64,000 nucleotides of DNA from Paragordius varius. Taxonomy: Eukaryota; Animalia; Nematomorpha. The notes beneath the pieces were generated by a model. That model saw nothing but the letters and a program-made list of their open reading frames with translations. It ran no database searches and had not been told where the DNA came from. Within the stretch, counting starts at the first letter, position 1. Every line of letters begins with the position of its first letter. The position numbers were made by a program, and so were the translations under genes. The stretch lies in the NCBI GenBank assembly GCA_964247055.1, contig OZ176050.1:1860001-1924000 (forward strand), written 5' to 3'. Positions 1,790 through 61,506 of this stretch are shown here, in pieces.

Positions 1790-3684
1790 CACTTCAATTC
1801 AATTTGGGGTATCTAAATACCCCAGATTAAATTTGAATTAATATTTTAAAAAAACTACTGAAGAAAACGGCCCCAATTTAAATTTATGCTTCTATACCAT
1901 TTTTCATGCAAAAACATCATTTTTTCAACCAAATGCAACATTTTTTCAACCAAACTCAACATTTTTTCAAGCAAACGCAACATTTTTTCAAGCAAAGACA
2001 ACATTTTTTCGAGCAAACGCAACATTTTTTCAAGCAAAGACAACAATTTTTCATCCAAACGCAACATTTTTTCAAGCAAACGCAACATTTTTTCAACCAA
2101 ATACAACATTTTTTCATCCAAACGCAACATTTTTTCAACCAACGACAACATTTTTTCAAGCAAAAACAACAATTTTTTTAAAATAAAAAACCATTTTTTT
2201 ATTTTTAGACATATTAATTTTAAAGTTAATGTAAATTAATTTTAGCGTAGAATTATGATTATTATTGTTTTATCATCAATATTTGATGGTATGATTGATT
2301 TTCAAACATTTTAATTGAGCCCATAAATTGCATTATTTATTTGTATTAATTATTTTTTTCTTTTACAACTTTAGTTTTACCTAATCAATCTATACTGCGC
2401 TTCAAGATTGTTCTTTATTTAAAGTTAGCCCTAGTACACTATAAGTTGGTCCTTCAATATTTTAATTTTGATTCTAACGTTTATTAATGTAGAAAATATT
2501 CATTATTCAATCATTTAAACCTATTTTTTTATTTAACCTATACCTTTAAGTGAATACATTTCTTTCATAAGAACCGTATATCCTTATTATTTTCTATAAA
2601 TTAATATTAAAAATATCTACGTGTGGGTTATTAATGGTAATATTTGGTTTAAAACAATAATAAATTTACAATATTGATGAAAAGAAAATTTTAAAACAAA
2701 GTTGTTTTACTATGATAATATTAATTTTGATTCAAAAAATAAATAGAGAAAAAAATAGATAATTACACACAAAAATAACGGTTTATAAAAACTGCAAAAA
2801 ATGTAAGGAATTTTAGGCGAAGGATATCTTTTAATTTTTAAAGAGAGTCTTAAAGCGCAAATTGTATTGATTGATGAAAAAAAATATTTTTAAATAAATA
2901 ATGCAATTTATGGGAATTAAAATGTTTGAAAATCAATCATACCATCAAATATTGATGATAAAACAATAATAATCATAATTCTACGCTAAAATTAATTTAC
3001 ATTAACTTTAAATTTAATATATCTAAAAATATGGTTTTTTATTTTAAAAAAATTGTTGTTTTTGCTTGAAAAAATGTTGTCGTTGGTCGAAAAAATGTTG
3101 CGTTTGGATGAAAAAATGTTGTATTTGGTTGAAAAAATGTTGCGTTTGCATGAAAAAATGTTGCGTTTGGATGAAAAATTGTTGTCTTTGCTTGAAAAAA
3201 TGTTGCGTTTGCTCGAAAAAATGTTGTCTTTGCTTGAAAAAATGTTGCGTTTGCTTGAAAAAATGTTGAGTTTGGTTGAAAAAATGTTGCATTTGGTTGA
3301 AAAAATGATGTTTTTGCATGAAAAATGGTATATCTAAATGAAAATTATATATATGTGCCAAAATATCTTGATAAAATTTTGCTTGGAAAAAAAAGTTCCA
3401 TCTCAAATTACTTCGACGCCATTTTTATTTTACAAAATTTTTGCAAAATATGGTCTTCATTTAATTTTAAGGGTAAAACTAGAGCTAATTTTTTATATAA
3501 ATAACATCTAACATTGATAGAAAACAAAAAAGCGGTTTATTTTGTATTATTTCTTAATTTTAGAATTCGACACATATCACGTTGACCAAATTTTTACCTT
3601 TTGGTTTTAGCTTAAAATAAGTAATATCAAGTATATTTGAATAAATATTTTTATATATTTCGGTTTTTTAATGTTATTTAAGTG
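1790..3684. mobile_element. Family E copy interrupted by the family A foldback
   Basis: TTAA|CACTTC start and AAGTG|TTAA end. The sequence on both sides of 1895-3330 is collinear with 20402-20967. Confidence 0.7.
1895..3330. mobile_element. Foldback element, family A (young copy)
   Basis: Starts TACCATTTTTCATGCAAAAAC and ends GTTTTTGCATGAAAAATGGTA. TA is duplicated at 1893-94 and 3331-32. Each arm has ~13 copies of the 21-bp unit GCAACATTTTTTCAAGCAAAC and the arms are nearly identical. The uninterrupted homologous site (CTTCTATCC) is visible in other family-E copies near 20500 and 63700. Confidence 0.9.
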
Positions 3685-5773: not shown

Positions 5774-6351
5774 TTGTTCCTTGAACACTTCAAGTTGGTC
5801 CTTTGACTTACTTGTTTTGTTTTTAACTTTTATCAATCAAATCGCAAATAATTCATCTATTTTATTGTATTTAACCTATTTTCTATCATAAATTTTAAAT
5901 CGATATAAGCTTTTAATCTTTGAGAAACCGGATATCGTTATTAATTTCTGAAATAATTTTGGATTCTATGAGATTTTAACATGAAATGAAAAAAAATTAA
6001 ATTTTTTTATTAATTTATAATAAAAACATTTGAAAGTCAATAATTTTGTTCAATTGAAAAAAAAATAGTTTTAAACAAAAAGGATTTTCAATAAAAAATT
6101 TATTTTTAAATGAATAAATATATAATAAATAAAAGAAATTTATGTTAATAAATAATAAAATATAAATATAAATACAAAAATGATTAAATCAATAAATAAA
6201 AAATTTAAGGACAACTTGATGTTTTCAAGGACCAACTTGAAATGTTCAATGACGAACTTGAACTATTCCAACTTGATCTGTCAAGTACCAACTTAAACTG
6301 TTCAATAACCAACTTGAAATGTTATAGGACACTCTTGCAGTGCAAACGGTA
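5771..6351. mobile_element. Family B foldback, left terminus lost
   Basis: B units at 5771-5810 and an inverted array at 6205-6335. Right terminus GCAGTGCAAACGGTA|TA. The core resembles 41760-42180. Confidence 0.75.
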
Positions 6352-7352
6352 TACTTTAAAAATATATAACATACGCATCAACACTCAAAAACTTTGCTCT
6401 TAAAAATAGGATATTGGTTCCCAGTGGACAAAATTATTTTTTATACATTATCCCAGTAAGACTACATCAAAATATACAGATAGGTTGATAATCTCTTTCA
6501 TATCCGATTACAAAGATATTAAAAATTAATGTGTAGCATAAGCAATACTCAAATTAAATTTTGCTCTTAAAAATCGGATATCACTCATAAATAAAATTAT
6601 TTATTATACATTATATTAGTAAGTCTACATCAAAATATACAGATAGTTTAATTAACTCTTTCATATCAGATTTTTACAACGATACTTTAAAAATTAATTT
6701 GCAAACGCATCAATACTCAAATTAAACTTAGCCGGACAAAATTATTTTTTATATATTACTACATCAACATATACAAATATTTTGAAAATCTCTTTCATAT
6801 CCGATTTTTACAAAGATACTTTAAAAATTAATGTGTAGCATAAGCATCAATAGTCAAATTAAACTTTGCGCTTAAAAATGGGATATTATTCCCAAATGGA
6901 CCAAATAATTTTTATACATTCTCTTATAAGACTACATCAAAATATACAGATAGTTTGAATAACTCTTTCATATCAGATTTTTACAACGATACCCTAAAAA
7001 TCAATGCGTAGCATACGCATCAATACTAAAATTAAACTTTGCCCTTAAAAATCGGATATTGATCCCCAATGGACAAAATTATTTTTATACATTCTCTTAG
7101 TTAGACCACCATAAAATATACAGTTGATAATCTTTTTTATATCCAATTTTTACAACGATGCTTTAAAAATTAATGTGTCGCATACGTATCAATACTCAAA
7201 TTAAACTTTACCCTTAAAAATAGGATATTGCTCATAAATGGAAAAATTATTTTTTATACATTACCTTAGTAAGACTACTAAAAATACACAGAGATGATTT
7301 ATCCTTTCATATCCGATTTTTACAAGGATACTTTAAAAATTAATGTGTATAG
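6352..7352. repeat. Tandem satellite, ~170-bp monomer, about 6 copies
   Basis: The motif GATACTTTAAAAATTAATG..GCAT..GCATCAATACTCAAATTAAACTTT recurs near 6350, 6515, 6680, 6815, 6988, 7157 and 7327. One unit is shortened. Confidence 0.85.
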
Positions 7353-22376: not shown

Positions 22377-25300
22377 TAAAGTCTCTTTTTTGCTTTTTAT
22401 TAATAGGTAAAGAATAGTATCGCCACTAGTAGAACACCCGCCTGCTCAGGGCTGACAGTGATGATGGTAAAATTGCGCAGTTTCGAGATTTGGTAGTTCG
22501 CACACACAGTGTAAGAATCCGTTCCATACCTACTATACTATCACGCCTTCAATTGAAATTGTAAATATAAAATACATTATAGGAGATAAAAAATATTGGT
22601 AATTATTAAAAATTATATTACCAATATTTTTCTCGGGATCTAATGCCAATGGAGCACAACTTTTGGAGAAAAAAGCAGCTGCGGATTTTGCAGGATTATT
22701 GCAATCTTTTACTTCCATTATACCTTTTTCTAATAATGTTCCTATAAAAAAAACAGGAAATTAGTTTTCGAAATTTTTACTAGAAATATTAGCATACCAA
22801 TAGGAATATTCCAGCCCGCTGTTCTCCCCACACCTGTGTGACAAGAACGTAATCCTTTCAAATCTGCCAAAGATTTTATATGACTGTTAGCTTTGACGAT
22901 AGCTACACCCTTGTACTTTGCTTGATTAGTTTTTCCTGTAGGAAAAAAATATTATCTGAGACACAATATTTTGTATAATATTCAAAAGTATTCAGTGTGT
23001 AGTTTAAGTCTTACTAAGAGGATGTAAAAATAATTTTTACTAAGGGTCACCCTTAGATATTCGAGCAACAATTAATTTGAAATGATAAGTATGCTGTTTT
23101 TATACATTTTTTTAGTATCCATGTAAATGGAAAACTATGGAAATCTGAAACTTTAACCATATTTCAGCGAAAGGCAACATATTTATAACCGACCGCAACA
23201 CTTTTTCAACCAAATGCAACATTTTTCAATCAAACGCAACCTTTTTATTAAAGTAAAAACAATATTTTTTCAAGCAAATGCATCATTTTTTCATCCATAC
23301 GCAACTTTGCCTGAAAAATGTTATGTTTGCTTGAAAAAATGTTACGTTTGCTTGAAAAAGTGTTGCTGGTTAAAATATTGCTTATAAACTAAAAATGGTA
23401 TATGTATATACCATTTCCCAATCTAAATAAACGTTTTCCCAGTCAATCGAAACATTTTCCCAATCAATCTAAACGTTTTCCCAGTCAATCGAAACGAGTC
23501 AATCGAAACATTTTCTCAGTCAATCGAAACGTTTTCTCAGTCAATCGAAACATTTTCCCAGTCAATATTTTCCCAATCAATAAAAACGTTTTCCCAGTCA
23601 ATAAAAACGGTTTTATTTTTGATGATAAATATCAAAACAAGACATAAAAATAACTTTTAACCATTATCAGCGTAATATTAGGATATTATTTTTTATAAAA
23701 ACACAATTATTATATGACAATATTAAATATATTCCAGTGCACAATCATTAATGACTTATTCTTTAAAAGTTATATTTTTGGAATTTTAGATGTTTTTAAG
23801 ATAATATTTTTTATTTTATTGATGGTTCGCATTAATATTTGCCGGCTTCAAAACAGTTTTTAAACATTTCAAGTTTTTCCATAGAAATACTGTGGGAAAA
23901 AATATCTAAACAAAAAATTTTTTTCGATAAAAATGTTTTTGATTTCAAAATATTTAAAAAAAAGATATTTGAAAACAGGGTTGTCTAACCAAATAGCTTC
24001 GCGGGCTGCATTGCTCAAAAAGCACGTCGTTCCGTTCGATATATTTCATAAATAATTTTTCGATTAGACATATGACTGTAAAATACAAAAATATAACAAT
24101 TTTTTTTAATTTGTTACCAATTTAACAGACTCATTTATTATAAATGCGTAAGAATATGAATATTACTAAGATTTTGTGATTTTTGCATATGGATTTCTAA
24201 ATTTTTAGCGGGCCGAAGATACTCGGCAGGCGTTGGGCACCCGATGAACCAAATGATAAATATCATAAATTAGGGTAAAATTTATGTTTAAGATTTAATA
24301 TGAGGTGTTAAATGACTTTTGAGATAAAAATGGTATATTTTTATAAATTTTATTATTTCATCCGTAACAATAGATTTTATAATTTAGCCGCAGATATGGA
24401 TGCGAACCATCGATAAAATAAAAAATATTATCTTAAAAACATCTATTCCAAAAATATAACTTTTAAAGATTAAACGTTTAGATTGATTGGGAAAATGTTT
24501 CGATTGACTGGGAAAACGTTTATTTAGACTGGGAAATGGTATATATTTTATTAGCTGGATGAGTATTTGATGGTTTTAGATTTTTTTAAGAAAATCAATA
24601 ATTTATTTATTTTATCAATCGTTTGCATTAATATTCGGGGCTAACCTAAAATATCCAAAGTTTCGGATTGAATTATAAAATTTATATGTATTTTCAACTC
24701 TTTACATTCAAAAAGGAAACCTTTTTCAACTTTGTCCGTGATCGAAATACTGTACGATGAAAAAGTTGATTTTAATGAAAAAATATATTGGATAGAATAC
24801 AAATACACAATATTATGGTACGCAAGTTTATGTTAATTTGAGATGTTTGTATGAAATTTTAATGTTTAAGGGCTAACTGAAACACAAATGGTATTTAATC
24901 TGATTACCTATATACAATGCAGCGATTATAAGGTGTTGTTAACCTTTTCTGTGACTATCTGGTGTGCAATAATTAAAAATATTATACCATAATTTTCTCG
25001 TCTGCTTTTAATTTATTGGATAAAAAGCTTACGTTTATTATTTTGCATACATCAGATTATCGATATAAGGTATTCATTTAATTTGGTAATATTTTAGTAA
25101 TGTCAGAAACAGGAATCAAGAAAAAATTAGTTGTATCTCAACAAGATAGAAAACGATTAGTAAAACGAGTTTTTTTTGATGGAGAATGGACTGTGGATGT
25201 ATCAAAGGATTTTAATATAAACTATAATACTGCTCGTCAAATTATGAATAAATATAAAAAAACAATAGTTCAGAAATTCTAACTCGTGGAGGCACTAAAA

Positions 25301-28300
25301 ACAAAAAAATTACGGAAGATATTATGCATTTCATAGATAATAAACTAACTTATCAGCCGTCATTAACAATTAACCAGTTAAAAAATTTTTTGGAAGATGA
25401 AAAAAAGATAAAATTATCTAAATCCTCTATAGACCGAGTTATCAAATCTTTAAAAATAACTTTGAAGTTAGCCCATCATCTTAATGAAAAAGTCAATGAT
25501 CCTCAAATAATAGATTTAAGGAAAAAATACGCAATATGGTTTTCACAATCTTTCTCCGATGACTTAACAAATATTATTTATTTGGATGAATGCGGTTATA
25601 ATAACCATATTAGAAGAATCCAAGGTCGATCCAAAAGTGTCACGAGAGCCAATATTGTGGTGCCTAGCGTAAAAGGCAGAAACATCACTTTTATTGGAGC
25701 TCTGTCATTAAGAGGTATGGTTTATTACGAAATAGAAAGCCAAAGAACAGTCAATTCCCAACGCTTTACAAGTTTTTTTGATGGACTTTGTGAATATTTA
25801 AAGCGGGACGAAATTCAATATCATTATATTATGGACAATGCACGGATTCATAAAATCAATGAATTAAAAGGTAGAGCCGATTTATACAAATACAAAATTG
25901 ATTTTTTGTCTCCGTACAGTTATATGTTGAACCCAATCGAAATGGCATTTTCAAAAATGAAAAATTTTGTCCGACAAAATATTATATTAAATAATATGAA
26001 TGCGAATGTGGAATTATTGAATCTGATAAAATTGGCAGCGGGCTCCATAACATCGGAAGATAGCAGAAATTATTTTGAAAAGATAATGACAAATATGGTA
26101 AAGGCGGCAGCCGGTTTACCTTATATGTGATCTTTTTATAACATATACAATAAATGAAAATCATTTTTAATAATTTTCCTCAATTTGTCTCTTTAACAAA
26201 ATCAAACAATGATTGATTTATTCAGGTATATTAGTACAGTAATAGTTCAACTTTTTAAAAATAAGTCATTAAAGATTATGTAGTGGAGTATATGGGAAAA
26301 ATTGTCATTCAATAATTGTGTTTTTTTGCAAAATATTATCCTAAAATTACGCTGATAATGGTTAAAAGTTATTTTTGTATCTTGTTTTGATATTTATTAT
26401 CAAAAATAAAACCGTTTTTATTGACTGGGAAAATGTTTTTATTGACTGGGAAAACGTTTCGATTGACTGGGAAAACGTTTCGATTGACGGGGAAAACGTT
26501 TCGATTGATTGGGAAAACGTTTCGATTGACTGGGAAAATGTTTCGATTGACTGGGAAAACGTTTCGAATGATTGGAAAAATGTTTCGATTGACTGGGAAA
26601 ACGTTTATTTAGACTGGGAAATGGTATATTAATTAAGGTTCATAAAAAGAAATAATTTGATCCATCGATGACTGAAATGTTTAATGATAAGTTTGCTGTT
26701 ATTTATATAATTATTTTTTGCCATCATGAAAAAATCGTATGATGAAAATGGAATTATATTTAAATTTAGTTTTACTAATATAAGAAAATTTTTGCCCACC
26801 GCTAACTATGTTTATTATAATTTTTTATCCTTGTAAAAATCGATTAAAATTTTTCAATAAGGCTTAATTTTTTGAACGCGATGTATTAGGTAATCGATAT
26901 ATAACGAAAATCTCAAAAAATCATAAAGACACCCGAAGTCGTAGGGAATGCGATAATTTTGAATTTTGTCATCAAATTAGATGATAAACTTCGCACAACG
27001 GCTTATCCTCAAAATTTGCTCCAATCGATGGAAAATATGGGAAATAGAGAACATGGATTTCAATAATTAAATATTTAATATTTCTTAATTGGAAGATAAC
27101 ACTAGACAACATAGTTGACTTTTTTTAACTGCCATTCTTGCAATTTAAAATTTATATCATTAAAGTACATAAATAATATATCTGAAATAAAATTCGCCCA
27201 ACGCCTAAGATTTTTATTTAATTATGGTTTATTGATTTTTTGGGTCTGATTCAACATTAAACTTGGAATTTTCAAATTCAAAAGTTTTAGATGTGGAGCC
27301 ATGTATTTTATATCATTCGGAGAAACGCAACGAACTGTTTCTTTCGAATGGTAATTGGTTATTTAAATCAATCTGATTTAAAAGTTATTTAGGTTTCTAT
27401 GGGAAAATTTTCCCTTAAATAAGTCAAAAATTTTCACAGACAAACTAATTTAAAAATAATATAAATTATTTTAATATAATTATTAGGTTTAAATTAGTAA
27501 AAAATTGTAAAAAATTCTTTGAAAAGCTTTTTGAATTATTATTACCATAAATGTTTAACCTAGTGTATACTAAAATGCATAGTTACAACTGTTGAATTAT
27601 TACATAATCGTCGAAAAAATAAAAAATACCTTAAACTTGTTTTTAGTCTTTGAAATTAAAAATTATAAGCATTCTAAAAAAATAAATAACCCTGTTCCCC
27701 TGAATTCGATAAAAAAGCCCATATTTTTTAAGGTTATTATAACTTTAAGAGTCCAAAATTAAAATGAGAACCGATTGCAATCTGGATATATTAGAATAAA
27801 AAATATTAATAATTTGGTACTAAAATATAATTTTATAGCTTTTTAAATTCTTTACATTTGTTAAATACCTTTATTTGCATGTTGTATCGGCATTCAAAGA
27901 ATGAATGGAACGAAAAGTTTGACATGAGGATCACAATTTAACTAAAAAAATGGATCAGGCGCTTTAAAACCTTAAGAATGCATATTAACTTACCATTAAA
28001 TATACGTCTTAAGATATTCAAATTTAGGGTATACTACCACAGAATGAAGTATTGGTGGTATTTTAACAGAGAAAGACGAAAAGAATTCGTAGTTTATTAG
28101 TTAAGATTCTTTTTTTAGATAAAATATTATTTATGCAGATATTAATATGGAAAAATTAAAATCGAGGAATATAATAATATATTTATGAAAATTGTGGAGA
28201 AAATACTCTCTACGAAAAAATACATGGCAACATACATGTAAACTAACTACCCTTTTATCCATTTAAAATATAGATTTAGCCTAATAATAGTGATCGCTCG

Positions 28301-35400: not shown

Positions 35401-35969
35401 ACCAAAAATAGAATAATTACGATAACTCTTTGCAGCAGAATTGGCTTTAAAATCTTGTCCATTCTGCAATTCAGCCACCTTAGAAGAATCCATGGCAGAA
35501 AATAGAGAAAAATCATAGAGTATCCAACATTTTGACCAATCGCTAAAAGCTTAGGATCTAAGCTCCCTTGAATCTACATAATAAAATACAACCATAATTA
35601 CTCAAACAAATCATATACCCAAAATCCGAGAGAGGCATTTGTTTTAAAAACAAGACAAATCCCAAAAAATAGGTGCCAAAAGGCGTCAGTATCCATCCAC
35701 CACACAGCTTTCCTTATTTTCTGCCATAAATGGTGGTGTGGATGAGATTCTTTTTCTAGTTCATCGGCATTATTTATTTTTCGAGGGATATCTTCCGTTT
35801 CAAACTCAGAATTGGTGGTTTTTGAAGTTTTTAACAATTGAATAAAAAATTGCTCGCCTTTTGGTTTAAATGAAATATATTTCCAAGCTGAAAGCGATAC
35901 CAAAAATGCAATAATAAGAGATATAACTATTAAAAAATCTGGTTGTTTTAAAATAATTTCCAAGGGCAT
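35401..35969 (-). CDS. Small uncharacterised multi-pass membrane protein (3' end uncertain)
   Basis: ATG ORF with hydrophobic segments FLIVISLIIAFLVSLSAW and FWHLFFGICLVF. A 45-nt GT-AG intron (35574-35618) joins in frame to an exon with a third hydrophobic segment VGYSMIFLYFLPWILL. No family recognised. Confidence 0.55.
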
Positions 35970-36003
35970 TGTTAAAAAATATTTTTTAAAAATGGTGACT
36001 TTA

Positions 36004-36043
<40 letters not shown>

Positions 36044-36279
36044 GCAAAAAACTAAGAGTTGATAAACTATTGATTTTCTAAACGATCTAACTACCCCTTG
36101 ATACCTGACACGCATGTTGTACTAACCATACATCCTTAATAAAGATTAATGTATCCTTTTTATGTATACAATATAATACCCTCATACATCATTATTTATT
36201 TATAAATACAGAGTTATAAATAATTCACTAAAGTAATATATAACAATTTCAACAGGATGATGGATGATTTATACACAAA

Positions 36280-38900
36280 TTAAATGTTCATTTGAAAAAG
36301 TGCAGATGGACATTGTTTATCATCATTATCATTTTTTTGGTTTAGTACAACTTCTTTGGACAGCTTCTCTTCTTCTAAACTTTTCTCATTGACCTCACAT
36401 CTATACAAAAAACAAGTATAGAAATTTATGAAAAAAACTATAAAAACTTTTTTTAAAATTGTTTAAGGGAATACTTTTTTTCATCCATATCATGAAAAGA
36501 TAGTTGTGGCTGATCATCGGCGGCTATTTTACTAATGTAATTGTAGGGAACCCACCCTTCTCCATAGTCCCCCAAAACCCACATCCATCCATTTGAGCTT
36601 CCTGACCTAACTGGGGGGCGTAAATATTTGTTTATGGTTGTAAAAGCCGATGTATTACCGTTGTCTTTAACGGTGTTTTCTTCGGATGTTAGATCACAAA
36701 CAGATGGTGCTTCTACCATATCACCCCTTCTAACTGTTAAATCATTAATATCTCTTGCAATAAAGTCATACAACACGATGTAGCGGTTTAATTTTGATTT
36801 TTTGGTCGGAATACTGCTATCGATAATTTATAAAAAATATATATAGAGAAAATATATTTGATTTAAACAACGAATCCAATAATACCTTGTATCATCCTTC
36901 ACCATGTTTAATATTTCATTACGTTTTAACCACGAATTGAGGGGTTCTACATGCTTAGGTATGGGAGGTGGGTCCGTATCTAAACAGGTGCTTCTATCAG
37001 GGATAAATTTTCTGGGCTTGCTGGGGGAGGTGGGTTTTGATTTAGAAACATTGCTGAAAGTTATTCCTGATTCGCTGGAAGTTAAGTGTTTAGACGAAAT
37101 AAATAACTTGTGAATGGGACTAAAAATGTGGTATTTCCATTTTTTGACATTTTTCTGGTCTAATTTAGTACCGTTGGTGCCGCTTAAATCAATATCATTT
37201 AAACTTTTGCTTTTTCGGACGTTTGATTTATTTAGAGTTTTTGAAAGCCATGCAAAAGGATTTACTAATTGCATTTTAGCACCAGTTTTTTTTAAGGTGC
37301 GCTCTTTTTTAACATCTTTAACTGTTTTCTTCTTTATTGGCTTAAATGGCTTTGAATTAGTGTCCGCGCATGTAGATTCAATTCTAGGAGGTTTTAAGTT
37401 AGAAAAACACTTATTATCCATTATTTTATAACTTTTATGCAAAGGTGATGCTCTTGATGAAAACAGCTCACATCTTGAATTAGAATTTTTACTTATGTTT
37501 TCGTTTTTTCTATTATCTTCATAATCGTCCGGATTATTGTAAATACTTGAATATTCTGCTTCTTCCATCCAGTTGTCCAAGTTTTTCATTTTCGCAATAT
37601 CATTATTATTTACTCCATTTTTAAAGGAGTCAAAAATACAAAGAGTATTTATTTGCCCCTCTTGACAATCCTTTATAATAGGAGCATATTTTTTGTTTTT
37701 TCCTTGCATTTTATTTCTTTGACCTTCTTTATTTATTGCTTTGCCCTTTCGAGTAAAAAATTTAGCAAGAAGAGTTTGCTTCGCTAGTCTTTTTGCATTT
37801 TCGTTAGTGGTTTTGCTAAAAGAGATTTCTCCTGTCCTAAATTCCTTATTTAAATTATGGTTTACATTTTTACCGTAAATCACATCAGGATTAATAATTT
37901 GCTCTTGACTCAAATATACCGATGATTTGCCAAATCTCGGTCTGGTTAGCTCATAAAACATGTGATGGCATCGACAAGTTCTATTTCCATGATGATTATA
38001 ATGAAGCTTAGTTGCTCGTATTTTTCCCAATTTGTGGTTCTTTCGTTGACCTGATCCGTGGGCAAATCGCTTTTTATTATGGACCATATTTGAGCTAGTA
38101 CACATATGGTCTTCGAAATTTTCTTCATCGTCGGAGTAACATAACCCATTTTTTATATCATTTGTTGGAAGTGTGGAATGCGCTGTATGATGAGATAAAT
38201 TATCTGGAGGTTTAGCATATTCATACTCATTTTCATATCGTGTCGAATTGTTGCTAACAAAGTCTGTTTTAAAAAAAAATTTCTCCTGCTTTTTTGGCAA
38301 AACATTATTCTCATTTAAATGTTCATCAGACATAGAGCGTTCTTCTTGACTGTTATTATTTAAATTTGATCCACCGCAACCAATTCCACTGTCCAAATCA
38401 TCCATCATTTGAATATTAGATTTCTTAATTGAATCAAACATTTCTTCGGCATGCTGTTCTTCTATATCATCGAATAAGTATTCGGATGAAGATTGTTCAA
38501 AACACAAATTATAATCAAAATTTGTAATAAATCTACAATTTTCCATGGGAACAAAACCTTGCTTTTTCAGTGGGGTAACGATGTACAATAAATTATCCTG
38601 TTTAAACAGTGCATAAACCAAATCTCCTCTGTTTAATTGTACAAATGTATTTGTTTCATTTGTGTCTGATGAGTCCAAAAGCATGCTAACTTCGGATTGT
38701 TTTATAATTTTTAGAGGCACCTTAGCTGGTGAATTCATGTTAGATTTCTCTAAAAGTTGTAAGAGGGATCTGACAAAATTAAGAATTTCGTCATCAATAT
38801 TAAAGTCCCTCTGAATTTCTCCATTTTGATCGTTGTTACTTTGTTTTTTATTTTTTGGGTAAAGATTATTTGCCATCGATTCGTAAATTTCACTTTCCAT
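36280..38900 (-). CDS. Two-SH3-domain adaptor protein (SH3 domains resemble Dlish/Vamana type), ~825 aa
   Basis: Exons 36886-38900, 36475-36816 and 36280-36400 join in frame via GT-AG introns (69 and 74 nt). N-terminal SH3-like segment LNRGDLVYALFKQDNLLYIVTPLKKQGFVPMENC. C-terminal SH3 RYIVLYDFIARDINDLTVRRGDMV...GWMWV...EGWVPYNYI. A long low-complexity N/K/S-rich linker lies between them. The Dlish resemblance is from recalled motifs, not a search. Confidence 0.8.
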
Positions 38901-40318: not shown

Positions 40319-41634
40319 TACCATTTTTCATGCAAAAACATCATTTTTTTAACCAAATGCAACATTTTTTCAACCAAACGCAACATTTTTTCAAGCAAAT
40401 GCAACATTTTTGTAAGCAAACACAACATTTTTTCAAGCAAACGCAACATTTTTGCAAGCAAAGACAACAATTTTTCAAGCGAACGCAACATTTTTTCAAG
40501 CAAACGCAACATTTTTTCAACCATAATAGACAACATTTTTTCATCCAAACGCAACATTTTTTCAACCAAAGACAACATTTTTTCAAGCAAAAACAACAAT
40601 TTTTTTGCCCCAATTTTTTTATATTATGACAAATTCATTTAATTTTAAGTTAATGATTAGTTAAATTTTAGCTTTGAATTATGATATTTATTCTTTTATT
40701 ATAAATGGTAAAATGATTAAACATTTTAATTTTGCCCTTAATTTAATTATTTTATATATTGTATACCATTTGCACTTTAAGAGTGTCCTACACTTCAAGT
40801 TGGTCCTTGAACATTTCAAGTTGGTCCTTAAAATTTTTAGATTTATTTTTATATTTCTTTATTATTTTTTAACCTAATTTTCTTTATTTATAATATATTT
40901 ATTCAGATAAAAATAAAAAATTTATTCAAAAACCACTTTTTTGTCTCTAACTAATTTTTTTTCAATTTAACAAAAATTATTAACTTTTAATGGATTTAAA
41001 TGAAAAATTGTAAATTGTATATTTTTGAATTTCGTGTTAAATTCTTTATAAAAAAATTAATATAGATCTACGGTTTCTGAATGAATAGGTGATTGATTTC
41101 AAAATTATGCTAAATAGTAGAAAATAGGTTAAAAACGATAAAATAGATGAATGATATCCAATTTGTTTGAAAAAGTTAAAAACAAAACAAAAAAGTCAAA
41201 GGACCAACTTGAATTGTTATAGGGAAACTTTAAATGTTCAAGGACCAACTTGAAGTGTTCAAGGACTCTCTTGAAGTGCAAATGGTATGCCAACATATAT
41301 TGATGTTAAAACAATAAAAATCATAATTCTACGTTTTAATAGGTCTTAAATTAAAAAAATGGTTTTTTATTTTAAAATTGTTGTTTTTGCTTAAAAAAAT
41401 GTTGTCTTTGGTTGAAAAAATGTTGCGTTTGGATGAAAAAATGTTGTTTTTGGTTGAAAAAATGTTGCGTTTGCTTAAAAAAATGTTGCGTTTGGTTGAA
41501 TAATTGTTGTATTTGCTTGAAAAAATGTTGTCTTTGCTTGAAAAAATGTTGCGTTTGCTTAAAAAAATGTTGCGTTTGGTTGAAAAAATGTTGCATTTGG
41601 TTGAAAAAATGATGTTTTTGCATGAAAAATGGAA
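40319..41634. mobile_element. Foldback element, family A, with a nested family-B element
   Basis: Same termini and 21-bp arrays as 1895-3330. The core contains a B element at 40764-41287 (TACCATTTGCAC...GTGCAAATGGTA). Confidence 0.88.
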
Positions 41635-41650
41635 TATATATATATATATA

Positions 41651-42359
41651 TACCATTTACACTTCAAGAGTGTCCTTGAACAATTCAAGTTGGTCCTTGA
41701 ACAGTTTAAGTTGGTCCTTGAACAATTCAAGTTGGTCCTTGAACAGTTCAAGTTGGTCCTTTAACTTTTTTTTTGTTTTTAACTTTTATCAATCAAATCG
41801 AAAATAATTCGTCTATTTTATCGTTTTTAACCTTTTTTCTATTATATTTACCATAAATTTTAAATCGATATCAACTTTTAATCTTTGAAAAACCGTATAT
41901 CTTTATTAATTTCTTAAAATAAATTTAGATATTTATAAGATTTTAACACGAAATGAAAAAATATATAAGTTTTCTGGGTTATTAATTAAAATTTTTCATT
42001 AAAAACATTTAAAAGTCAATAATTTTGTTCAATTGAAAAAAAATAGTTTTAAGAAAAAAAATTGGTTTTTCAATAAAAAAATTTATTTTTAAATGAATAA
42101 ATATATAATAAATAAAGAAAATTAGGTTAATAAATAATTACTTAAAAAAATAAATGCAAAAATTATGGTTAAATCAAAATTTATAAATTTTAAGGACCAA
42201 CTTGAACTGTTCAAAGACCAACTTGAACTGTTCAAGGACCAACTTGAATTGTTCAAGGACCAACTTGAATTCAAGGACCAACTTGAACTGTTCAAGGACC
42301 AACTTGAATTGTTCAAGGACCAACTTGAATTGTTCAAGGACACTCTTGAAGTGTAAATG
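41651..42359. mobile_element. Foldback element, family B
   Basis: Starts TACCATTTACACTTCAAGAGTGTCCTTGAAC and ends GTTCAAGGACACTCTTGAAGTGTAAATG. The 21-bp unit is AATTCAAGTTGGTCCTTGAAC. The right end is fused directly to a family C terminus. Confidence 0.88.
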
Positions 42360-43470
42360 TACCATTTTCCAGTAAAAAAACGTTTTCCCAGTCAATCGAA
42401 ACATTTTTCCAGTCAATCGAAACGTTTTCCCAGTCAAAAAAACGTTTTCATAATCAATGAAAAACGTATTTCCACTCCAGAAAAACGTTTTCCCAGTCAA
42501 TAAAAACGGTTTTATTTTTCATAAAAAATATCAAAACAAAATTTAAAAATATGTAACCATTATCAGCGTAATATTAAATATTATAATTTGTAAAAACATA
42601 ATTATTATGACAATATGTCCTATTAAATTCCAATCACGATCATTAATTACATAAAGGTTATATTTTATGGAATTTTAGTATTTTTAAGAAAATAATTAAA
42701 ATTTTATTTTTCTATCGATGGCAAGCCTGGGCTAACTTATAAAATGTATAGTTACTGGTCAAATAATAAAACTTTTAAAAATAGACCATTTCTATCTGAA
42801 ATCGGCCATCGCCTTAAATGGATTTTAAACGTGTCAAGTTTGTCAATAATATTGGGGAATAATATATCTAAACAAAAAATTTTTTGATAATGTTTTGGAT
42901 TAAATATTTAATAAAAAGGATATTACAACACAAATGGCTTCGCGGGCCGCATTTTTAACTCAAAAAGCACGGCGTTCCGCTTTCGAAATATATGCGGGCA
43001 TTCATAGATAATTTATTCGATTTTATACATAAGACTGTAAAATGCAACACAATATAACAATTGTTTTCAAGTTCGTTGCCAAATAGACTTATTTAGGAAA
43101 ATTGCGTAAGAAATATCAATTTTACTAAGATTTTATGGGCATATTTGTGCATATATATATCCAAATTTTTCGCGGGCCGCAGAACATCACAGGTCCGCGT
43201 GTTGACCCCCGGACTAAAAAATAAATATATTAGATAAATTATGGTAAAGTTGAGATGTTTAAAATCCACTTTGAAGCGTTAAAAAACCAATTTGAGATAA
43301 AAATGGTATATTTTTAAAAATTTTATTATTTCACCAATAACTATAGATTTTATAAGTTAGCCAGAATAGGCTTGTCATTGCTAGAATAAAAAATTAAATA
43401 TATTCTTCAAAATACTCAAATTCCATAAAATATAACCTTTAGAATAAGTTATTTATGATTGTGATTGGAA
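42360..43470. mobile_element. Family C foldback, right terminus lost, hAT-MITE-like core
   Basis: Starts TACCATTTTCCAGT with C-type 21-bp units. 42630-42760 is inverted at 43310-43470. The core 42925-43212 matches 23976-24243. Confidence 0.75.
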
Positions 43471-43753
43471 TATAAGTGGAAAAAATTTCTTTTAACAAGT
43501 AAATTTTTTAAAACACAAAACAAAAATACATTAAGAAAAATATGAAAAAAAATTTATAAAATATTTACAGAAGATTTTCAAGCGGTCATATTTCGAAATT
43601 TCGCGGAAAGCTGACGGCGGTCAACCGTTTGGCCACCACTGATATATATAGAAAAAATTGTACAAAATATTTTCGATTCCACAATTAATTAGTCATAGAG
43701 TAAAACGTCTTTGCGTATTTTGTACGGTGTAATTTTTTATTTTTATATAAATA

Positions 43754-44867
43754 TACCATATTTCATGCAAAAACATCATTTTTTCAAACAAAGACAGCAT
43801 TTTTTTAAGCAAAAACGAAAATTTTTTAAAAATTTTATACCATTTTTTTTTATTTTATGACATATTAAATTTATAGTTAATGTAATTTAATTTTAGCCTA
43901 GAATTATGATTTTTATTGATTTATCATCAATATTTGATTATATGATTGAATTCAAACATTTGTAACTTTGCCCATAAATTGAATTATTTTATAATATTTT
44001 TTTCTTTTAAAACATTTTCGCTCAATCAATAAATATAATTTCCGGTTCAATTTTTGTTGGTCTTAGAACACTTCAAGTTGGTCCTTCAATATTATTTTGA
44101 TAACTTCTATTAATTAAGCAATATAATATACTTTTAAGTGTGTATCATTTCTTTCTTAACTGTATATTATAAAATATTTAGCTATATTAAAAATATCTAG
44201 GTTTTATATATTATTGATCGTAATATTTAGTGTAAAACATTAATAAGTTTAAAATATTGATAAATAAAAGAAAATTAATTCGAAACAAAAGTTATTTTTA
44301 CTAAATAATATTTTTGATTCAAAAACTACAAATAAATTAAGATAATAGTTTAAATTTAAAAAAAAGAAAATTTACAAAAATAGCGGTTGTATGCAAACTG
44401 CAAAAATGTAAGGAACTTTAAATGAAGGATAACTTTTTTCAAATACACTCTCGAAGCGCAAATTGTATATATTAATTTGGTTAAACTAAAGTTGTAAAGG
44501 AAAAAATTAATTTATATAAATAAATAATGCAATTTAAGGCCAAAATTAAAATCTTTTAAAATCAATCATACCATCAAATATTGATGATGAATCAATAAAA
44601 ATTATAACTCAACGCTAAAATTTTATTAATTAAATTAAAGTTATATAAATTAATAATTAAATTGTCATAAATAAAAAAATTCTGTTAATTTAAAAAATTT
44701 GTTGTTTTTGCTGAAAAAATGTTGTCTTTTGTTAAAAAAATTGCGTTTGGAAGAAAAAATGTTGTCTTTGGTTAAAAAAATGTTGCGTTTGGTGCAAAAA
44801 ATGTTGTCTTAGGTTAAAAAATGTTGCGCTTTGTGGAAAAAATGATGTTTTTGCATGAAATATGGTA
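43754..44867. mobile_element. Foldback element, family A variant
   Basis: Termini TACCATATTTCATGC and GCATGAAATATGGTA with TA flanks. The left array is short and the right array longer. The core has a degenerate B relic. Confidence 0.82.
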
Positions 44868-60829: not shown

Positions 60830-61506
60830 TTAAGGGCTCGTTAATATATTAGGATACATTATGTAATATGGAACTTAATATAAGTTTTGTGATTCGTTCT
60901 GAACTTAAACGAATTTCGTTACCAAGTATAGGAAATCGGGTCTTCATTCGACCGAAAACCCGCGCTCGATAATGCTTCTTTCAGAACAATGTAATTTATT
61001 GAATTTTTTCCGTTATCGATCATCGTATTTTTGAAGGGGGTTAGGAGCGAGGGTGATAGTGGATATCCATTATCACCCAACAAAAAAAAATCTTTGCACA
61101 TATATGACTGAACAATCGTGTTTCGCCATATCCTTGAATCATGCACAGATCCTGGCCATTGTGCATCCACGGATGTAATTTCTTTATTGGCATTACATGT
61201 AAATTGTACATTGAGGGTACATCGACCCTTTCGATTTATATAGGCCTCAACATTTTCTTTAGGTCTTAATATTTCAAAGTATGAACAATCAATACAACCA
61301 ATAGTAGTTGGCATTTTATATTTGGATAGCCATAATTTATTCGCCATATTAAGCTCTTCAAATGACTTGGGAATTTTTACCCAATGAGATTTTGATACTA
61401 TTTCGTCCATAACCTTAGGTATAGTTTTGCATATTGTGGAACTATGAACATTAAAATCATGTCCTATACCCGCTAGATATCCCGGATCTCCAAGAAATCT
61501 TAACAC
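60830..61506 (-). pseudogene. Harbinger (HARBI1-like, DDE_Tnp_4) transposase, frameshifted near the C-terminus
   Basis: Motifs IGCIDCS, YINRKG, LNVQ.TC, VDAQWPGSVHDSRIW, LLGDNGYPL. After a shift: ERSIIER..GRMKTRFPIL...LHN. Confidence 0.88.

What the first reader, a model, noticed from the sequence alone, without database searches (positions are those of the whole stretch)
23409..26626. Candidate master element: DD34E transposase between ~370-bp modular foldback arms
A nearly intact IS630/Tc1-type transposase lies between inverted family C arms made of 21-bp tandem units and flanked by TA, the target duplication this superfamily makes. Tc1-like elements usually have short or IR-DR TIRs, and foldback elements often lack an identified transposase. 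This copy may link the TACCATTT-ended families to their mobiliser. Caveat: an internal extra right end at 24541 makes the structure composite, so the ORF could be a passenger.
Basis: partly seen in the sequence, partly recalled or inferred. Interest (0 to 1): 0.85.

Follow-up and report, generated by a model that had tools for sequence, protein, structure and literature searches.

The report
Jumping gene with 21-base modular ends
A cut-and-paste jumping gene whose long ends are rows of ten 21-letter repeats really does belong to those ends, as relatives in other organisms show, but this copy is a broken patchwork (a non-coding mini-element joined to a frameshifted gene), not the master copy.

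Summary
In detail: 87%-identical inverted arms (23409-23771, 26249-26626), each of ten 21-bp unit positions, TA-flanked, enclose a DD34E IS630/Tc1/mariner transposase with one frameshift. The ORF is not a passenger. 26 of 29 loci of its protein clade (8 sources, including two microsporidia) have flanking tandem arrays, 23 with period 21; all six nearest relatives with visible ends start TA|TACCATTT; and family C mini-elements carry an inverted copy of the gene's own 5' region. But the 3.2-kb unit is composite: a non-autonomous C foldback (23409-24541, itself holding a nested fifth family) is joined end-to-TA onto a left-truncated coding copy (24542-26626). It is not the master: public contigs show roughly ten copies, in frame where this one is broken. 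The link covers family C only; family A units match other transposase lineages better. The protein sits beside, not in, the Gambol-signature clade; Gambol already has long TIRs and MITEs. Units are probably phased transposase-binding sites (inferred, untested). The scan found this design before on other DNA of this genome (s1-379326, s1-261378, s1-298916). New variant of a known kind; moderate interest.

The parts
23407..23408 (.). TA target-site copy, left
   Evidence: sequence; TSD shown to be TA, not TATA, by an empty-site test on family A
23409..23771 (+). Left C arm: 5-bp cap TACCA, ten 21-bp unit positions (23414-23611, two small deletions), then 160 bp non-repetitive arm
   Evidence: first 70 bp 69/70 to the internal right end, 66/70 to the distal right end
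23772..23847 (+). Inner inverted repeat of the non-autonomous C element, homologous to the 5' region of the transposase gene; truncated on this side
   Evidence: 90% to 24386-24473 inverted; 81% to 24574-24635
23858..24335 (-). Nested fifth TACCATTT-ended piece ('E'), left end lost here; complete with 67-bp inverted ends at 42784-43308
   Evidence: 73% over 522 columns to 42823-43312; end at 24335
24342..24473 (-). Right inner inverted repeat of the non-autonomous C element (inverted copy of the gene's 5' region)
   Evidence: 75% to 24577-24686 inverted
24472..24541 (-). Internal right end: shortened C arm (cap plus three units; about 280 bp of arm deleted)
24542..24543 (.). TA at the junction between the non-autonomous element and the coding remnant
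   Evidence: sequence; a multi-copy contig in run X2 begins exactly at 24542 (table 8)
24544..25099 (+). 5' region of the transposase gene; 24564-24686 is the part duplicated in C mini-elements
25100..25282 (+). Transposase, N-terminal piece (first helix-turn-helix, PAI-like), runs to a stop after the frameshift
   Evidence: HTH_SB E 0.019; 35% to P0001 17-59, E 4e-5
25258..26130 (+). Transposase, remainder: RGG linker, second HTH, RNase H-like DD34E domain (D 25585, D 25834, E 25939)
26131..26248 (+). 3' untranslated region with AATAAA at 26149
26249..26626 (-). Right C arm: non-repetitive part, ten 21-bp units (26412-26621), 5-bp cap
26627..26628 (.). TA target-site copy, right
42360..43475 (+). 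Second, older non-autonomous C copy with the same layout (left arm, inner inverted repeats, nested E), right arm lost

Best explanation
Family C is a TA-targeting IS630/Tc1/mariner cut-and-paste transposon of a Gambol-related DD34E lineage. Its simple coding form is about 2.46 kb: arm, 5' region, transposase, arm. Each arm is a 5-bp cleavage cap followed by a head-to-tail row of 21-bp units (two helical turns), most likely repeats of the bipartite site bound by the paired-like double helix-turn-helix domain, so that several transposases load on one face of each end while only the capped outer unit is cut (binding inferred, not shown). Non-autonomous C foldbacks arose by inverted duplication of the left end plus about 130 bp of 5' region and are moved in trans. 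This locus is a later patchwork: such a mini-element was joined by its right end to a TA in the 5' region of a coding copy, and that copy's own left arm was lost (insertion followed by recombination between the two left arms, or an adjacent deletion; the two cannot be told apart). The coding part then, or earlier, lost one base. It is a dead witness of the family's autonomous partner, not the master.
For: Shown: 26/29 loci of the protein's 99/99 clade have flanking tandem arrays above all 100 shuffles, 23 with period 21; cap and units are in one register in 26 foreign loci and 4 window families; all six nearest relatives with visible ends begin TA|TACCATTT. C mini-elements carry the gene's 5' region. 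A contig crossing 26233 with at least 40 letters each side, thus from 3' region into the arm, has depth 824 against 1118 for the gene core in X1, 10.6 vs 11 in X5. TSD is TA. Left end pairs better with the internal end (69/70) than with the distal end (66/70). Contigs across the frameshift have one more base (X2 records 13, 14; X7 record 28); core/flank depth about 11-14. Fold matches Mos1 and Sleeping Beauty; profile hits Pax paired domains. Known: repeats in long TIRs bind transposase in Galileo (PMC3688188) and Sleeping Beauty (PMC5224488); long-TIR MITEs arise by template switching (PMC3814204).
Against: No complete simple copy of family C was in my hands; its left junction is deduced. Depth ratios of contigs are rough. 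20 of the 29 clade loci come from one metagenome. Binding and activity are untested, no RNA run holds the gene. The main contig in X1 and X2 lacks one base near 25856, so many other copies may be broken too.
Confidence: 0.8

Rival explanations
1. The transposase is a passenger captured between two C mini-element ends and has its own, lost, unrelated TIRs.
For: The locus is composite and the left arm belongs to the mini-element; nesting is common here.
Against: Nearest relatives have the same terminus and unit layout; C mini-elements contain the gene's 5' region; most copies run from the 3' region into the arm.
Confidence: 0.05
2. The whole 3.2-kb composite is a real amplified subfamily that moves by its outer ends, the internal end being skipped.
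For: Both outer ends are intact, TA-flanked and 94% identical over 70 bp, so it could be moved in trans.
Against: The multi-copy contig of X2 starts exactly at 24542 and holds none of the internal end, and one X1 contig joins 23829 to 24630; another scan note reports a 2467-nt form, close to my predicted 2462 (unverified).
Confidence: 0.12
3. This one transposase mobilises all TACCATTT-ended families (A, B, C, D, E), because the shared cap and period are what it reads.
For: All five families share cap, TA target and 21-bp register; positions 1-3 and 9-12 of the unit are similar across families.
Against: One metagenome holds some 20 distinct transposases each with its own unit; A units match L019/L022 (33, 32 of 42) better than C (26 of 42); other notes report further DD34E families in this genome (unverified).
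Confidence: 0.15
4. The arrays are neutral slippage expansions of one binding site; only the outer unit matters.
For: Unit number varies from about 2 to 15 among relatives; the internal end kept only three units; Gambol MITEs keep only the outer TIR part (PMC3212995).
Against: The period stays 21 across proteins only 30-45% identical while unit sequences diverge, and arrays are mirrored at both ends. Mirror symmetry could also come from TIR homogenisation.
Confidence: 0.3

Closest known systems
DD34E/Gambol group of ITm transposons (with Hiker and Dici as neighbours)
   Same: DD34E triad, TA target, IS630-like catalytic motifs, TIRs longer than usual, MITE derivatives (PMC3442997, PMC3212995, PMC13469147). 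Proteins with the W[ILV]DEDC-type motif are among the hits, and their clade also holds elements with 21-bp units (L028, L033, L089).
   Different: The window protein and its first 76 listed relatives lack the motif and form a separate 99/99 clade. I found no text describing phased 21-bp arrays in Gambol TIRs, but the original paper was not held.
IR-DR Tc1 elements (Sleeping Beauty, Minos, Bari) and Tc3
   Same: Long TIRs with repeated transposase sites, paired-like DNA-binding domain, DD34E, TA target (PMC4120734, PMC5224488).
   Different: IR-DR ends have two or three sites spaced apart; here ten abut head to tail at a fixed 21-bp period. Only 16-18% identity to Mos1 or SB.
Galileo and Foldback-type elements (Galileo, FB, Tm1, Phantom)
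   Same: Long TIRs with internal tandem repeats; in Galileo these are extra transposase sites (PMC3688188); variable arm length; palindromic non-autonomous forms.
   Different: Those use P-element or Mutator transposases and longer TSDs (titles/abstracts; TSD length from my own knowledge); this is ITm with TA.
Long-TIR Stowaway-like MITEs (Goblin, Tc6, Tc7)
   Same: Non-autonomous form built from an inverted duplication of one subterminal region of the coding parent (PMC3814204).
   Different: Their parents have short TIRs; here the parent itself has modular arms.
Sailor (DD82E)
   Same: TATA seen at the ends; TIRs may be read as starting with CC (PMC8533490).
   Different: DD34E here, and the empty-site test gives a 2-bp duplication.

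Membership tests
IS630/Tc1/mariner (ITm) | DDE/D RNase H-like catalytic domain of the DDE_3 type | tested here: met
   PF13358 E 1.6e-14; fold matches Mos1, SB, SETMAR; triad located
IS630/Tc1/mariner (ITm) | N-terminal paired-like double helix-turn-helix | tested here: met
   Profile hits Pax6, Pax5, SB PAI and RED; three-helix second HTH in the model; first HTH in the upstream frame
IS630/Tc1/mariner (ITm) | TA target-site duplication and terminal inverted repeats | tested here: met
   TA flanks at this locus; 2-bp duplication shown on family A against three empty paralogous sites. No empty site was available for this locus itself.
IS630/Tc1/mariner (ITm) | Cut-and-paste activity | not testable with these tools
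   No assay; this copy is frameshifted
DD34E/Gambol | DD34E spacing | tested here: met
DD34E/Gambol | W[I/L/V]DEDC signature near the N terminus (recalled from Coy and Tu 2005; paper not held) | tested here: not met
   Absent in the window protein and nearest hits; present in seven more distant hits
DD34E/Gambol | Groups with Gambol in a transposase tree | tested here: inconclusive
   Separate starred clade from motif-bearing proteins, relation between the clades open; no curated Gambol reference was available, no outgroup root
Tc1 sensu stricto / IR-DR | Groups with Tc1/SB transposases; two or three spaced DRs per TIR | tested here: not met
   SB only E 4e-4 by profile against IS630 model E 1e-25; ten abutting units
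Bacterial IS630 (NF033545) | Score above the curated cut-off | tested here: inconclusive
   90.6 bits against 100 for the piece lacking its N terminus; full-length relative P0001 scores 124. Bacterial relatives are distant
Sailor | DD82E and TATA duplication | tested here: not met
Foldback of Mutator or P type | Mutator or THAP/P transposase, 7-11 bp TSD | tested here: not met

The most novel reading that the evidence does not exclude
A widespread, unnamed Gambol-related ITm lineage (this animal, microsporidia, soil and moss eukaryotes) builds its ends from one fixed 5-bp cleavage cap plus a helically phased, expandable row of 21-bp sites on which the transposase loads as an ordered multimer, in the manner of Mu or Tn7 ends; many families coexist in one genome, each with its own unit code, giving a natural library of orthogonal paired-domain/site pairs.
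Probability: 0.35. Interest if true: 0.65.

Novelty: new variant of a known kind. Interest (0 to 1): 0.42.

Why it matters
It gives an identified enzyme for one of the abundant foldback families of this genome and shows that foldback architecture is native to an ITm lineage, next to the known P and Mutator cases. The constant 21-bp period over very divergent transposases makes a clear test of what tandem arrays in long TIRs do (number and phase of sites). As a single locus it is a broken composite and matters little; the same design was already flagged elsewhere in this genome.

Tried and rejected
Micro-intron as the cause of the frameshift: the only GT..AG stretch there (25268-25291) is 24 nt and would not change the frame; rejected. 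Programmed -1 frameshift: no canonical slippery heptamer in frame, and other copies have the extra base; rejected. TATA duplication as in Sailor: rejected by empty sites. Internal core as a transposase remnant or known RNA: no tblastn match, only sub-threshold miRNA-like Rfam hits on AT hairpins. Other transposase copies in the window: none. Bacterial source: only distant IS630. Coy and Tu 2005 and the Hiker paper are not held. My first idea that the junction TA is exactly homologous to the TATA at 23771 is only one of two possible alignments. The host was not identified.

Full report
Observation. The window is about 26% GC. The two outer arms align at 87% over 381 columns. Read inward, each is TACCA followed by 21-bp units: ten full units on the right, ten positions with a 7-bp and a 6-bp deletion on the left, then about 160 bp of non-repetitive arm (144/164 identical). 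Both ends are TA-flanked. The gene starts at 25100, changes frame near 25260 and ends at 26130. It scores DDE_3 E 1.6e-14, has D, D, E at 25585, 25834, 25939 with 34 residues between the last two, and its model (pLDDT 79) matches Mos1 and Sleeping Beauty structures best. A profile of relatives hits Pax paired domains. The extra right end at 24541 is real.

Target site. Ends read TATACC, which fits either TA plus TACC or TATA plus CC (the Sailor pattern, PMC8533490). A family A element at 1895-3330 sits in a repeat with empty paralogues; removing it leaves exactly two extra bases against three of them. Relatives with TACAGGG at both ends agree. So the duplication is TA and the element begins TACC. 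This was tested on family A, not on this locus.

Is the gene native to the arms? Three lines say yes. First, relatives: 30-45% identical transposases were fetched with flanks. In a tree the window protein lies in a 32-row clade with 99/99 support. Of 29 loci in it, 26 have a flanking tandem array above all 100 shuffles, 23 with period 21, two 22, one 20; where both ends are on the contig they form TIRs. All six members of the nearest subclade with a visible end start TATACCATTT. Cap and units are in one register in 26 foreign loci and four window families. The loci come from eight sources, among them Cucumispora and Dictyocoela assemblies, but 20 of the 29 are from one metagenome, so they are many families rather than many hosts. 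Second, the non-autonomous C copies (23409-24541 and 42360-43475) continue past the arm with about 130 bp that are homologous (69-81%) to 24564-24686, the 5' region of this gene, present on both sides as an inverted repeat. They therefore descend from the left end of this coding element, as the Goblin MITE does from Ozma (PMC3814204). Third, contigs of four public runs: the gene core has about 11 times (X1) and 14 times (X2) the depth of the unique flank, and a contig that crosses from the 3' region into the right arm has nearly the same depth as the core (824 vs 1118 in X1; 10.6 vs 11 in X5). Depth ratios are rough and X1 may be related to the source sample.

What the locus is. The first 70 bp of the left arm are 69/70 identical to the internal right end and 66/70 to the distal one, with three shared variants, so 23409-24541 is one element. 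Inside it lies a further piece, 23858-24335, whose complete form at 42784-43308 has its own 67-bp inverted ends starting TACCATTT and sits at the TA in the centre of a palindrome: a fifth family nested in the C foldback. After the internal end come TA and a coding copy with no left arm. A multi-copy contig in X2 begins exactly at 24542 and includes nothing of the internal end, which is what a graph does if most copies have another predecessor there (inference, a variant at 24572 would do the same). A mirror of the right arm plus 24542-26626 gives 2462 bp; an unverified scan note describes a 2467-nt element with about 380-bp arms. The simplest history is a transposase-made join of the mini-element's end to a TA at the inner edge of a coding copy's left arm, then loss of that arm by recombination between the two left arms, or an adjacent deletion.

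Not the master. This copy cannot make a full protein. Three contigs that cross the break are one base longer than the window (X2 records 13, 14; X7 record 28), and relatives have an unbroken linker there, so the break is a mutation or assembly slip in an A-run of this copy. The main X1 and X2 contigs lack one base near 25856 instead, so an entirely intact copy is not shown. No RNA run holds the gene.

Other families. A, B, D and E share cap and period but not unit sequence. A units match L019 and L022 at 33 and 32 of 42 positions, C only at 26, and those transposases lie in another subclade. One metagenome holds some 20 such families side by side, each with its own enzyme. So A, B and D probably have their own partners; cross-mobilisation is not excluded.

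Mechanism. Shown: architecture, register, target, clade-wide period. Inferred: the first unit (bases 6-26) lies where ITm paired domains bind (own knowledge; bipartite sites in PMC5224488); the unit has two better-conserved patches, a T-tract at 1-3 and TCAA-like at 9-12; 21 bp is two helical turns, so bound proteins would line up on one face. The cap stands in register with the unit junctions but differs from them, which would confine cutting to the outer end. Galileo is the tested precedent for extra sites in tandem TIR repeats (PMC3688188). The neutral-expansion rival remains open.

Classification and novelty. It is an ITm member. It is not Tc1 in the strict sense or IR-DR. It lacks the Gambol N-terminal motif and forms a clade apart from seven motif-bearing hits, whose clade also contains 21-bp-unit elements; the tree had no curated references and is midpoint-rooted, and three duplicate Deinococcus loci and all ORFs under 230 aa were left out. 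Gambol families are reported to have unusually long TIRs and MITEs (PMC3442997, PMC3212995). Seven literature searches found no description of phased 21-bp arrays in ITm ends, but the key Gambol and Hiker papers and Repbase could not be read. The scan has met this design before in this genome. Verdict: new variant of a known kind, interest 0.42.

Noticed in passing
window 42784-43308 and 23858-24335: A fifth TACCATTT-ended family ('E', about 525 bp, 67-bp degenerate inverted ends, weak 21-bp register) nested at the central TA of the C foldback palindrome in both C copies, so the nested form was itself amplified.
   Followed up: partly
window 23156-23400: 245-bp family A mini-element ending 8 bp before the C left end; TA-rich ends act as landing sites.
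   Followed up: partly
window 40319-44867: Pile-up of A, B and C copies inserted next to or into each other; the C copy at 42360 abuts a B right end that has lost its last bases.
   Followed up: partly
window 1895-3330: Young family A foldback (arms 96% identical over 468 bp) inserted in a dispersed repeat with empty paralogues at about 20500, 29320 and 63715; used to fix the TA duplication.
   Followed up: yes
window 25856 (runs X1, X2): The deepest contigs of the transposase lack one base here, in the catalytic domain, so the most amplified copy in those samples may be broken at another place.
   Followed up: no
window 60919-61506 (-): Fragment of a PIF/Harbinger-type DDE_Tnp_4 transposase (E 7.5e-21).
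   Followed up: no
window 35598-38900 (-): Host gene with a 690-codon open frame and SH3-like stretches by eye; no Pfam hit at E 0.001.
   Followed up: no
window 6351-7349: Tandem array of 173/307-bp units.
   Followed up: no
L003:2490-2950: Dictyocoela relative with about 15 units upstream of the gene, the longest array seen; L002 (Cucumispora) is inserted in a piggyBac-type gene.
   Followed up: no
L008-L035 (Ga0307474): One metagenome holds some 20 distinct, mostly intact families of this lineage with TACCATTT, TAGCATTT, TAGGTTTT or CAGGGTTT caps and different units.
   Followed up: partly
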